A stretch of 63,530 nucleotides of DNA from Octopus bimaculoides (GCF_001194135.2 NC_068994.1:2058203-2121732); one strand, 5' to 3'; shown: positions 40,381-40,453, counted from the stretch's first letter. Notes: generated by a model not told the origin, from the letters alone. Numbers and translations: made by a program.

Positions 40381-40453
40381 GGTTTATGGGATTACTCTGG
40401 GTTTCACGTCCATAAAGCACATAGCTTTACGGCGTATCATCAGACCCCAAACC
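40381..40453 (-). ncRNA. Type I hammerhead ribozyme (minimal stem III) at the PLE end
   Basis: GGUUUGGGGU-CUGAUGA-U-ACGCCGUAAAGC(UAUGU)GCUUUAUGGACGU-GAAA-C(CCAGA)G-UA|AUCCCAUAAACC. The core is complete, stem II has 12 bp, stem I has 5+5 bp with a 2-nt bulge, and the cleavage triplet is GUA. Confidence 0.8.

What the first reader, a model, noticed from the sequence alone, without database searches (positions are those of the whole stretch)
40381..40453. Complete hammerhead ribozyme fold at the 3' end of a Penelope-like remnant, sense to the protocadherin
Seen: the minus strand folds into a type I hammerhead. Stem I is GGUUU/AAACC plus GGGGU/AUCCC with a 2-nt bulge. The core is CUGAUGA (40443-40437) with one extra U (40436). 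Stem II has 12 bp and a UAUGU loop, followed by GAAA (40405-40402), a minimal stem III C(CCAGA)G, and a GUA triplet, predicting cleavage between 40393 and 40392. It sits exactly where PLE homology ends. Established: PLE terminal repeats carry hammerheads with very short stem III, and an extra nucleotide after A9 is known from a viroid hammerhead. Inference: the retroelement ORF is dead but the ribozyme looks intact. If the long upstream-intron model is right, it lies sense inside the protocadherin pre-mRNA and could cut it co-transcriptionally. I do not know whether this family's ribozyme has been described.
Basis: partly seen in the sequence, partly recalled or inferred. Interest (0 to 1): 0.82.

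Follow-up and report, generated by a model that had tools for sequence, protein, structure and literature searches.

The report
Relic hammerhead ribozyme of dead retrotransposon
The motif is a genuine hammerhead ribozyme sequence, but it is the ordinary, already described ribozyme carried at the tail of Penelope-like retrotransposons, here in a dead, deleted copy that has probably lost the ability to cut RNA.

Summary
The minus strand 40453-40381 carries a complete type I hammerhead core, three helices and a predicted cleavage site at 40393|40392. It is not chance: 0 of 300 shuffles match a moderately strict descriptor. A covariance model built only from 21 hammerheads next to homologous elements elsewhere ranks it first in the window (24 bits, E about 4e-5).

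The host element is a 5'-truncated, internally deleted, frameshifted copy of the 'Hydra' clade of Penelope-like elements, inserted in a (TA)n microsatellite. In relatives the ribozyme lies on the coding strand, a median 138 nt after the endonuclease domain. Helices I and II covary strongly.

Rfam's silence is uninformative, because it also misses a textbook control.

The copy is not fully intact. The family's quasi-palindromic helix III, needed for the dimeric active form, is broken by C40400. That gives a C.A mismatch and a self-duplex of +0.2 against -9.4 kcal/mol. No partner ribozyme lies nearby. The predicted lowest-energy fold sequesters the core.

Cleavage of a protocadherin pre-mRNA has no support. 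The exon with its own Met and signal peptide lies 26.6 kb downstream.

Known kind; low interest.

The parts
40381..40453 (-). Complete type I hammerhead motif. Helix I 40453-40444 / 40392-40381. Core CUGAUGA 40443-40437. Unpaired U 40436. Helix II 40435-40406. GAAA 40405-40402. Helix III C40401...G40395. U40394, A40393. Predicted cleavage 40393|40392.
   Evidence: Sequence read. Descriptor scan. Family covariance model R1 hit 40448-40388, 24.0 bits, E 3.9e-5. 0/300 shuffles.
40400..40400 (-). C at position 15.3, where relatives have U (or A, with a compensating partner). It creates a C.A mismatch in the intermolecular (dimer) helix III.
   Evidence: In 21 relatives, 15.3-16.3 is UA in 15 and AU in 6, with 0 unpaired. 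The helix III self-duplex is +0.2 kcal/mol for the window against -9.4 for the consensus CUCAGAG.
40454..40610 (-). AGC/AAC-rich spacer, including (CTG)5-6 at 40513-40529, between the last recognisable endonuclease residues and the ribozyme. It replaces about 114 codons of endonuclease plus the short 3' UTR.
   Evidence: Translations. tblastn mapping. TRF.
40611..40782 (-). Linker and start of the GIY-YIG-like endonuclease of PLE copy A: 'NRHNLRVSFSC' (40782-40747), 'NIKSI..', CxCX5C-like 'CSCRTT/RC' (frameshifted), and 'CPIGDHCETKEVVYEAEV' (40664-40611).
   Evidence: tblastn with a Hydra-clade composite protein. Frames. Compared with L007 and L004 ORFs.
40777..41177 (-). N-terminal part of the reverse transcriptase of PLE copy A ('[28 protein letters not shown]' ... 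'FDVAMGAY'). It is frameshifted. It joins directly to the linker, so about 204 residues of RT palm/thumb are deleted. The N-terminal ~170 residues (RWK and DKT motifs) are absent.
   Evidence: E 1.9e-22 to homologues; 4202 relatives. maps composite residues 174-318, then 523-534.
41179..41310 (.). (TA)n-like microsatellite abutting the 5' end of copy A.
   Evidence: TRF.
40315..40380 (.). 3' tail of the element (40380-40365), then (TA)5 (about 40360-40351) and (TG/AC)16 (40347-40315). This is the microsatellite target at the 3' end.
   Evidence: In relatives, (TA)n follows the ribozyme at offsets of 27-46 nt in 8 of 41 cases, and within 150 nt in 12 of 41.
38027..38420 (-). Second, 5'-truncated PLE remnant (copy B). 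Endonuclease 'INHVVFEAEV..KKYIGLCKNDFKGHHANH..CKLFIAER' runs from 38420 to about 38130. 'AACAGATTTGAGATCTGA' (38044-38027) matches the 5' part of the copy A ribozyme; the rest of the ribozyme is deleted.
   Evidence: tblastn. Translation. Local alignment, (short: 15 of 18 identical, suggestive only).
8400..8442 (+). Decayed solo hammerhead of the same family (ACUGU CCGACAA ... UAAA CUCUGAG UA ACAGU) between microsatellites. The core is mutated.
   Evidence: R1 second hit, 17.2 bits, E 0.0067. Sequence.
11149..13737 (-). Large protocadherin exon, given for context only. Met and signal-peptide-like start at 13614. It is on the same strand as the ribozyme, 26.6 kb downstream of it.

Best explanation
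The motif is the terminal hammerhead ribozyme of a Penelope-like retrotransposon (PLE) of the 'Hydra' clade.

In live elements, according to the cited papers, this ribozyme sits in the pseudo-LTR just after the RT-endonuclease ORF. Elements are inserted as partial tandems, so two ribozymes end up on one transcript. Their helix III is too short to form within one molecule, and the two copies are proposed to pair through its quasi-palindromic sequence. The resulting dimer is proposed to cut after H17 and so trim the retrotransposon RNA out of longer transcripts.

The copy in this window is a fossil. The element is 5'-truncated, frameshifted, lacks about 204 residues of RT and about 114 residues of endonuclease, and lies in a (TA)n microsatellite. 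Its ribozyme keeps every catalytic-core nucleotide. However, it has lost one base pair of the dimer helix (C40400), has no partner copy nearby, has A-U instead of G-C or U.U next to the core, and has a 12-bp helix II. It is therefore most probably catalytically inert and has no role for the host.

Shown here: the motif, its homology and position, covariation in the family, and the decay of the element. Inferred: that it is inactive. Taken from the literature: the dimeric cleavage mechanism.
For: Motif and significance.

Host element:
- RT N-terminus homologous to 4202 proteins.
- Those homologues carry the RWK and DKT motifs.
- They also carry a CxCX5C linker, an endonuclease without CCHH, and CxxC and CxH motifs.
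- (TA)n flanks on both sides.
- These features match the definition of the Hydra clade, for which 'canonical HHRs were readily detected' and which occurs in Mollusca (PMC8557442).

Related loci:
- In 80 metagenome loci and 7 other loci, descriptor hits are 38 on the ORF strand against 5 on the other strand.
- The median distance from the endonuclease CxH motif to the ribozyme is 138 nt.
- R1 finds 67 such ribozymes.

Covariation:
- 12 of 14 pairs show compensatory changes and 90% of cells are paired, against 66% in shuffles and 25-62% when the pairing partner is slid.
- In the 21-sequence set, the dimer pairs 15.3-16.3 and 15.4-16.4 are 100% paired with changes on both sides, although my descriptor did not require them.

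Tandem arrangement: identical ribozymes 2.44 kb apart in L001, and ribozymes on both sides of the ORF in L005.

Decay of the window copy.

Literature: monomers are inactive, dimers weakly active, an extra nucleotide after A9 is typical, helix II is long and helix I short (PMC4209133; PMC6765202).
Against: - No copy of the same family from the same genome could be retrieved. I therefore cannot show that C40400, the inserted A40435 or the long helix II are private mutations rather than features of a local subfamily.
- The link between the ribozyme and copy A runs through 157 nt of low-complexity sequence with no homology. The ribozyme could belong to a separate, extremely 5'-truncated insertion.
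- Inactivity is inferred from thermodynamic predictions and from published assays on other PLE hammerheads, not measured. Nearest-neighbour energies ignore the tertiary contacts of the hammerhead core.
- All catalytic nucleotides are present, so residual activity cannot be excluded.
Confidence: 0.85

Rival explanations
1. The relic ribozyme is still active, lies in a long 5' intron of the protocadherin gene in sense orientation, and cuts the nascent pre-mRNA, so that it lowers or regulates expression.
For: Same strand as the protocadherin exon. All core nucleotides are intact. Helices I and II are very stable.
Against: - The exon at 13737-11149 has its own Met and signal peptide at 13614. There is no evidence for an upstream exon or a promoter beyond 40453.
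- Helix III is 2 bp. Ribozymes of this class are reported not to cleave as monomers and to cleave only slowly as dimers (PMC4209133; PMC6765202).
- The dimer palindrome is broken. The other family motifs in the window are decayed or truncated.
- The predicted MFE fold pairs C3-U4-G5 with loop 3 and is 7.2 kcal/mol better than the catalytic fold.
- A preprint on vertebrate genomes reports that related hammerhead-bearing non-LTR retrozymes are excluded from introns and exons (abstract of 10.64898/2026.07.22.740005). By analogy, an active sense-strand ribozyme inside a gene might be selected against. That study did not test solo PLE ribozymes or invertebrates.
Confidence: 0.04
2. The ribozyme does not belong to PLE copy A. 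It is the tail of a separate insertion, either an extremely 5'-truncated PLE copy or a short non-autonomous retrozyme-like element, that landed next to or inside copy A.
For: - 157 nt without homology separate the last endonuclease residues from the ribozyme, and about 114 endonuclease codons are missing.
- Solo ribozyme fragments of this family exist in the window, at 8400-8442.
- The literature says most genomic PLE hammerheads occur as single motifs from truncated elements (PMC4209133).
Against: - Orientation and order (RT, linker, endonuclease start, ribozyme, (TA)n) are exactly those of an intact element. Copy A already has one large internal deletion, so a second deletion is the simpler account.
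- There is no microsatellite or target-site signature at the supposed junction other than a (CTG)n run.
- Either way the motif is a PLE-derived hammerhead, so the main conclusion is unchanged.
Confidence: 0.1
3. The motif is a chance match to the hammerhead consensus in AT-rich repetitive DNA.
For: The bare pattern CTGATGA..GAAA..GTH is expected about once per window by chance. Rfam gives no hit.
Against: - 0 of 300 shuffles once the helices and C15.2/G16.2 are required.
- An independent family model gives E 3.9e-5.
- Helix III, CCCAGAG, differs by one base from the commonest family sequence, CUCAGAG.
- It lies at the expected place and on the expected strand of a homologous element.
Confidence: 0.01

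Closest known systems
Hammerhead ribozymes of the 'Hydra' clade of C-terminal EN+ Penelope-like elements (Craig, Yushenova, Rodriguez & Arkhipova 2021, PMC8557442)
   Same: - The host element has the same protein signature: KDHK..CRLINP reverse transcriptase, a CxCX5C linker, and a GIY-YIG domain without CCHH.
- It shows the same (TA)n insertion preference.
- The ribozyme lies on the coding strand just after the ORF.
- My model built from such ribozymes recognises the window motif.
   Different: - The window copy is a deleted, frameshifted relic.
- Its ribozyme has an inserted A, so 10.1-11.1 is A-U. Relatives have G-C (25) or U.U (31).
- Helix II is 12 bp, against 3-10 in relatives.
- There is a C.A mismatch at 15.3-16.3, where 21 of 21 aligned relatives pair.
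Minimal or short-helix-III hammerheads of metazoan PLEs (Cervera & de la Pena 2014, PMC4209133; Lunse, Weinberg & Breaker 2016/17, cited in PMC6765202)
   Same: Type I topology, long helix II, short helix I without a defined loop 1, an unpaired nucleotide between A9 and helix II, a 1-2 bp helix III, and a location in PLE terminal repeats. By analogy, dimer-dependent and weak cleavage is expected.
   Different: The published hallmarks include a conserved G10.1-C11.1 pair and a palindromic helix III/loop 3. The window motif fails the first and meets the second only in part. The Hydra-type helix III is C-N5/6-G, a 9-10 nt quasi-palindrome with a central mismatch, rather than a 0-4 nt palindromic loop.
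Type I hammerheads of metazoan non-LTR retrozymes (Cervera & de la Pena 2020, PMC7229834; Li et al. 2026 preprint 10.64898/2026.07.22.740005)
   Same: PLE-related type I hammerheads. They occur as tandem or dispersed short non-coding repeats, which could explain solo motifs such as 8400-8442.
   Different: Retrozymes are tandem repeats of a few hundred nt that give circular RNAs. No tandem unit is present here, and the motif is attached to coding remnants of an autonomous element.
Intronic hammerheads conserved in amniote genes (Rfam HH9/HH10; de la Pena & Garcia-Robles 2010, cited in PMC4209133). Details are from my own knowledge.
   Different: Those have a stable helix III, act as monomers and are conserved across species at orthologous positions. 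The window motif has none of these properties demonstrated and is a transposon relic. No Rfam HH9/HH10 hit.
CChMVd (+) viroid hammerhead with an extra nucleotide after A9 (De la Pena & Flores 2001, as cited in PMC4209133)
   Same: One extra unpaired nucleotide between A9 and helix II, compatible with catalysis.
   Different: That is a viroid type III ribozyme with no relation by descent. In the window the U is homologous to the family's conserved U at this position (15 of 21 relatives).

Membership tests
Hammerhead ribozyme (type I) | Conserved core C3 U4 G5 A6 N7 G8 A9 / G12 A13 A14 / A15.1-U16.1 / H17 not G | tested here: met
   CUGAUGA 40443-40437, GAAA 40405-40402, U40394, A40393.
Hammerhead ribozyme (type I) | Three helices around the core, with helix I open-ended | tested here: met
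   Helix I 5-6 bp plus 4-5 bp; helix II 12 bp; helix III 2 bp (A15.1-U16.1, C15.2-G16.2). The catalytic fold is not the predicted MFE: -20.7 against -27.9 kcal/mol.
Hammerhead ribozyme (type I) | Helices supported by covariation in homologues | tested here: met
   Among 59 distinct related PLE ribozymes, 12 of 14 pairs have compensatory changes and 90% of cells are paired. In the 21-sequence set, helix I is 6/6 and helix II 6/7. The helix I and II pairing percentages are partly imposed by my descriptor, and the alignment was fitted to the model. The helix III/dimer pairs were not imposed by the descriptor. Same-genome copies were not available.
Hammerhead ribozyme (type I) | Match to the Rfam hammerhead covariance models | tested here: not met
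   No hit at gathering score or at E <= 10. The test is uninformative. Rfam also misses a textbook minimal PLE hammerhead, and it reports nothing at gathering score in L001-L004, where hammerheads are present.
Hammerhead ribozyme (type I) | Site-specific self-cleavage giving 2',3'-cyclic phosphate and 5'-OH ends | not testable with these tools
   Needs an in vitro or in vivo assay.
PLE short-helix-III hammerhead (Cervera & de la Pena 2014) | Located in the terminal repeat or 3' end of a Penelope-like element, on the element's sense strand | tested here: met
   The order on the minus strand is RT, linker, endonuclease start, ribozyme, then about 20 nt, then (TA)n. In relatives the ribozyme is a median 138 nt after the CxH motif.
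PLE short-helix-III hammerhead (Cervera & de la Pena 2014) | [quoted passage not shown] | tested here: met
   U40436. U occupies this column in 15 of 21 relatives.
PLE short-helix-III hammerhead (Cervera & de la Pena 2014) | Conserved G10.1-C11.1 pair | tested here: not met
   A40435-U40406. In Hydra-clade relatives this position is G-C in 25 and U.U in 31 of 59.
PLE short-helix-III hammerhead (Cervera & de la Pena 2014) | Palindromic 15.2-16.2 and loop 3, which allows a dimeric helix III | tested here: not met
   C15.2-G16.2 is present, but ACCCAGAGU is not self-complementary (C.A at 15.3-16.3). The self-duplex is +0.2 against -9.4 kcal/mol for the consensus. Relatives are 21/21 paired at this position.
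PLE short-helix-III hammerhead (Cervera & de la Pena 2014) | Recognised by a covariance model of the family built without the candidate | tested here: met
   R1, built from 21 sequences of other origin: top hit in the window, 24.0 bits, E 3.9e-5. This is among the lowest scores in the family.
Hydra clade of Penelope-like elements (Craig et al. 2021) | Reverse transcriptase homologous to the clade | tested here: met
   E 1.9e-22 to 5.7e-10 for the first hits. 40-45% identity to many family members. Residues 174-318 of a composite map to 41177-40777.
Hydra clade of Penelope-like elements (Craig et al. 2021) | N-terminal RWK motif, and DKT in place of DKG | tested here: inconclusive
   This region is missing from the 5'-truncated window copy. 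Both motifs are present in its long homologues (RMRWKA near residue 36, ADKT near residue 114).
Hydra clade of Penelope-like elements (Craig et al. 2021) | CxCX5C linker. C-terminal GIY-YIG endonuclease without CCHH. CxxC and CxH around the conserved E and N. | tested here: inconclusive
   In the window, 'CSCRTT' and 'RCPIGDHC..VVYEAEV' are split by a frameshift, and the rest of the endonuclease is deleted. The motifs are clear in homologues: NCNCRNKEAC, CNLC, CRH/CQH. Copy B keeps KKYIG..H..CKLF.
Hydra clade of Penelope-like elements (Craig et al. 2021) | Insertion into (TA)n | tested here: met
   (TA)n-like array at 41179-41310 at the 5' end, and (TA)5 at about 40360-40351 at the 3' end.

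The most novel reading that the evidence does not exclude
The solo ribozyme has been co-opted. The unusually long helix II and the A-U closing pair would stabilise a monomer, or a heterodimer with transcripts of other PLE copies. It would then cleave read-through or intronic RNA upstream of the protocadherin exon and so give a ribozyme-based brake on a neuronal adhesion gene. A lesser novelty is that the U.U versus G-C dimorphism at 10.1/11.1 in Hydra-clade hammerheads could be a functionally distinct core variant that has not been characterised biochemically.
Probability: 0.03. Interest if true: 0.65.

Novelty: new member of a known kind. Interest (0 to 1): 0.2.

Why it matters
It mostly matters as a calibration point. 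A reader without tools correctly spotted a real ribozyme that Rfam's curated models miss. The reason they miss it is systematic. PLE hammerheads, with a 1-2 bp helix III, an extra nucleotide after A9 and a long helix II, fall below every Rfam hammerhead model, although animal genomes hold thousands of them.

For the genome itself, the motif marks the 3' end of a decayed Hydra-clade Penelope-like element and helps to annotate the repeat landscape upstream of a protocadherin exon. It does not by itself point to a new mechanism or to regulation of the host gene.

The family alignment made here (67 ribozymes, strong covariation, covarying dimer helix) could seed a covariance model for this class.

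Tried and rejected
- **Rfam cmscan**, at gathering score and at E <= 10: no hammerhead. Not counted as evidence against, after the positive control failed too.
- **Pfam** on the three minus-strand frames of 40381-41160, and on intact relatives' ORFs: no RVT_1 or GIY-YIG. The clade is too divergent for these models, so classification rests on motif comparison with Craig et al. 2021.
- **First protein search**, with the middle and C-terminal conceptual peptide only: no hit. Success came only after adding the 'KDHK..CRLINPAKSE' segment.
- **Second copy of 40381-41160 in the window** by blastn: none, only microsatellites and a SINE-like repeat.
- **L004 11870-11990**, a long inverted repeat containing 'CTGATTG...GACGAAG': considered as a possible ribozyme and rejected because the core is not a consensus match. 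The real ribozyme is at 12278-12329.
- **R1 third hit, 58249-58202**: rejected as chance (E 0.38, no GAAA/helix III match).
- **Idea that copies A and B are one element split by an insertion with a duplicated 'VVYEAEV' segment**: rejected, because the two segments differ at many synonymous positions.
- **Look-up of the protocadherin ORF**, to identify the organism or an orthologous locus: not on record. The source species remains unidentified. The many N gaps and TA/TG microsatellites fit a draft invertebrate assembly. A cephalopod origin is only my guess.
- **Supplementary files of Craig et al. 2021**: not held.

Full report
**1. The observation**

Reading the minus strand of 40453-40381 gives:

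GGUUU GGGGU CUGAUGA U ACGCCGUAAAGC UAUGU GCUUUAUGGACGU GAAA C CCAGA G U A AUCCC AU AAACC

- The predicted scissile bond is between A40393 (H17) and A40392.
- The 73-mer folds better than its shuffles (z = -4.4). However, the predicted minimum-energy fold is not the catalytic one (section 5).

**2. Is it more than chance?**

- The bare core pattern is expected about once per window.
- My descriptor requires CUGANGA, helix II of at least 4 bp with 0-1 extra nucleotides, GAAA, UH, and helix I of at least 4 bp. It hits in 27 of 300 dinucleotide shuffles.
- Requiring helix I of at least 5 bp and C15.2/G16.2 leaves 0 of 300.
- Rfam gives no hammerhead hit at gathering score or at E <= 10 on a 351-nt slice.
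- That negative carries no weight. Rfam also misses a textbook minimal PLE hammerhead in a related locus: L004 14678-14634, AGAUGA CUGACGA U GACCU AUAUA AGGUC GAAA UCGA UU UUAUCU. It also reports no hammerhead in L001-L004 at gathering score, although several are present.

**3. The host element**

The window is a draft eukaryotic assembly with many N gaps and TA/TG microsatellites.

Upstream of the motif on the minus strand, the translation reads:
- '[28 protein letters not shown]';
- after a frameshift, 'ISWFNV...FDVAMGAY';
- joined directly to 'NRHNLRVSFSC..NIKSI..CSCRTT';
- after another frameshift, 'RCPIGDHCETKEVVYEAEV'.

Database searches:
- Pfam sees nothing, and a first protein search without the N-terminal piece found nothing.
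- With that piece, six fragments matched (E down to 1.9e-22).
- A profile of them (A1) retrieved 4202 proteins, one of them from the sea cucumber Apostichopus japonicus.

Features of the homologues:
- Long homologues carry 'RMRWKA' and 'ADKT' motifs.
- Near-complete elements in L004 and L007 show a 'NCNCRNKEAC' (CxCX5C) linker.
- They also show a GIY-YIG-like domain ('IVYKA..YIG..R..H') without internal cysteines, and 'CNLC' and 'CRH/CQH' motifs near the C-terminus. They end in (TA)n.

These features match the published definition of the 'Hydra' clade of C-terminal EN+ Penelope-like elements. That clade is described as short (<3 kb), inserted in (TA)n, found in Cnidaria, Mollusca, Echinodermata and Arthropoda, and 'canonical HHRs were readily detected' (PMC8557442).

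Mapping a composite Hydra-clade protein on the window shows that copy A retains:
- residues 174-318 (41177-40777);
- residues 523-534 (40782-40747);
- residues 565-582 (40664-40611).

Copy A therefore lacks the N-terminus, about 204 residues of RT palm/thumb and about 114 residues of endonuclease, and it has several frameshifts and stops. (TA)n-like arrays flank it at 41179-41310 and at about 40360-40351.

The ribozyme lies 157 nt after the last recognisable residue and about 20 nt before the 3' microsatellite. 'At the 3' end of a Penelope-like remnant' is therefore right. 'Exactly where homology ends' is loose.

**4. Related sequences**

Ribozymes next to homologous ORFs:
- My descriptor found hammerheads on the ORF strand downstream of the endonuclease domain in L001/L004, L002 and L003. 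L003 carries two inverted copies; one ribozyme there lies 47 nt after the stop codon.
- L005 has one about 480 nt upstream of its ORF, and R1 later found a second one after its endonuclease domain.
- An alignment of endonuclease domains (A3) was used to fetch 80 further loci from metagenome contigs.
- In these loci the descriptor hits 38 times on the ORF strand and 5 times on the other strand.
- The distance from the CxH motif to the ribozyme has a median of 138 nt, and 12 of 41 ribozymes are followed by (TA)n within 150 nt.

Shared architecture:
- helix I of 4-8 bp;
- CUGANGA;
- then either G...C or U...U flanking helix II (3-10 bp);
- GAAA;
- C-N5/6-G;
- UH, mostly UA.

Covariation in 21 sequences of the 7-nt helix III class, aligned without the window (A5):
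- All six helix I pairs and six of seven helix II pairs show compensatory changes.
- C15.2-G16.2 is invariant.
- Positions 15.3-16.3 (UA 15, AU 6) and 15.4-16.4 (CG 18, AU 2, UG 1) always pair. My descriptor did not demand any of these helix III features.
- A four-pair stem closing a one-nucleotide loop cannot form within one molecule. This covariation therefore points to the intermolecular, dimeric helix III proposed for PLE hammerheads.

The family model:
- A covariance model from A5 (R1) was run with filters off over the whole window. It ranks 40448-40388 first (24.0 bits, E 3.9e-5; E-values are rough).
- The same model finds 67 ribozymes in the loci.
- On that alignment of 59 distinct sequences, 12 of 14 pairs have compensatory changes. 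90% of cells pair, against 66% in shuffles and 25-62% when the pairing partner is slid.

The window's helix III, CCCAGAG, differs by one base from the commonest family version, CUCAGAG. The motif is therefore a member of this ribozyme family by descent, not merely a look-alike.

**5. How intact is it?**

All catalytic-core nucleotides are present. Three things set it apart from its relatives.
- An inserted A40435 makes the pair next to the core A-U. Relatives have G-C (25) or U.U (31). The published PLE consensus stresses G10.1-C11.1.
- Helix II is 12 bp, longer than in any relative seen. This leaves loop 2 far from helix I, so a canonical loop-loop contact is unlikely. That last point is inference.
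- C40400 at 15.3 faces A at 16.3. The self-duplex of the helix III region is predicted at +0.2 kcal/mol, against -9.4 for CUCAGAG and -9.5 for CACUGUG.

In addition, the catalytic fold scores -20.7 kcal/mol against -27.9 for an alternative in which C3-U4-G5 pairs with the CAG of loop 3.

No second intact ribozyme exists in the window.
- Copy B, a second 5'-truncated remnant at 38420 to about 38130, keeps only an 18-nt stub, AACAGATTTGAGATCTGA, at 38044-38027. It resembles the 5' part of the copy A motif.
- The motif at 8400-8442 has a mutated core.

Published assays found no cleavage by monomeric PLE hammerheads and only weak cleavage by dimers (PMC4209133; review PMC6765202).

I therefore consider this copy most probably inert. 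That is an inference, not a measurement.

**6. The protocadherin idea**

- The large protocadherin exon is at 13737-11149 on the same strand. Its Met and signal-peptide-like start are at 13614, which is 26.6 kb downstream of the ribozyme.
- The sequence gives no evidence of an upstream non-coding exon or promoter.
- Even if the site were transcribed, the points in section 5 argue against cleavage.
- I could not find the gene in the protein-to-contig index. The species and the transcript structure therefore remain unknown.

**7. Comparison with what is known, and verdict**

The closest known things are:
- the hammerheads of Hydra-clade PLEs (Craig et al. 2021);
- more broadly, the minimal or short-helix-III hammerheads of metazoan PLEs (Cervera & de la Pena 2014; Lunse et al.).

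The extra nucleotide after A9, the long helix II, the short helix I and the tiny helix III are all published hallmarks.

The window motif meets the tests for core, position, extra nucleotide and family model. It fails the G10.1-C11.1 and palindrome tests, as expected for a mutated relic.

It is a new member of a known kind. The proposed host function is not supported. Interest is low (0.2).

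Noticed in passing
window 8400-8442 (+): Decayed solo hammerhead of the same family (ACUGU CCGACAA U..U UAAA CUCUGAG UA ACAGU), wedged between TG/TA microsatellites. Helix I and the palindromic helix III are kept, while the core and helix II are ruined. 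R1 gives 17.2 bits, E 0.0067.
   Followed up: partly
window 38027-38420 (-): A second Hydra-clade PLE remnant (copy B). It holds only the endonuclease domain ('INHVVFEAEV..KKYIGLCKNDFKGHHANH..CKLFIAER'), with stops, a (GTT)n run, and an 18-nt stub that resembles the 5' part of the hammerhead. The rest of the ribozyme is deleted.
   Followed up: partly
window 1543-2037 (-) and 2740-2826 (+): Further Hydra-clade PLE fragments: RT palm/thumb 'GIYSNDGLAI..LKITVE..YRK' on the minus strand, and linker 'HKTFNGDSVKVSYNC' on the plus strand. This may be an inverted pair, as is typical of PLE insertions.
   Followed up: no
window 39950-40224, with copies at 38771-39070, 30039-30361, 61658-61790, 57009-57147, 55051-55157: A SINE-like dispersed repeat of about 275-300 bp (69-81% identity between copies). 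One copy lies just downstream of the ribozyme. Not identified.
   Followed up: no
Loci L001-L087 (alignment A6): Hydra-clade hammerheads come in two forms at positions 10.1/11.1: G-C (25 of 59 distinct) and U.U (31 of 59). The U.U form departs from the 'highly conserved G10.1-C11.1' of the published PLE consensus. I do not know whether it has been tested biochemically.
   Followed up: partly
L004 14634-14678 (-): A textbook minimal PLE hammerhead with an extra U, G10.1-C11.1 and the palindrome AUCGAU as helix III. It lies 2.9 kb from the Hydra-clade ORF and on the opposite strand, so it probably comes from another PLE family. Neither Rfam nor R1 detects it.
   Followed up: partly
L003 and L004 ORFs (L003 9746-10884, 9049-9411; L004 10001-11747): Pfam RVT_1 and GIY-YIG models do not hit Hydra-clade PLE proteins at E <= 0.1. 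Only PF26215 (HTH_animal), PF28514 or, rarely, PF00078 appear in the precomputed annotations. Such elements are therefore easily missed by domain-based annotation.
   Followed up: no
window 40396-40400 with 40440-40444; also relatives with helix III CUCAGAG: The loop 3 sequence (U/C)CAG is complementary to the core CUG(A). The predicted lowest-energy monomer fold therefore sequesters the catalytic core. This could be a built-in off-state of the monomer, or a coincidence of the palindrome.
   Followed up: partly
L001 6864-6917 and 9303-9356 (+); L005 5522-5566 and 7874-7915 (+); L003 8956-9002 (-) and 11545-11591 (+): Pairs of ribozymes 2.3-2.6 kb apart, in tandem (L001, L005) or inverted (L003). 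This matches the pseudo-LTR and inverted-copy arrangements described for PLEs.
   Followed up: partly
window 58015-58266 (+): An ORF with C2H2 zinc-finger-like repeats ('CRVCHKVCNSNEGLKRHSKIHKD', 'CNLCGCLFNMLSGLKSHIRHH'). Not examined.
   Followed up: no
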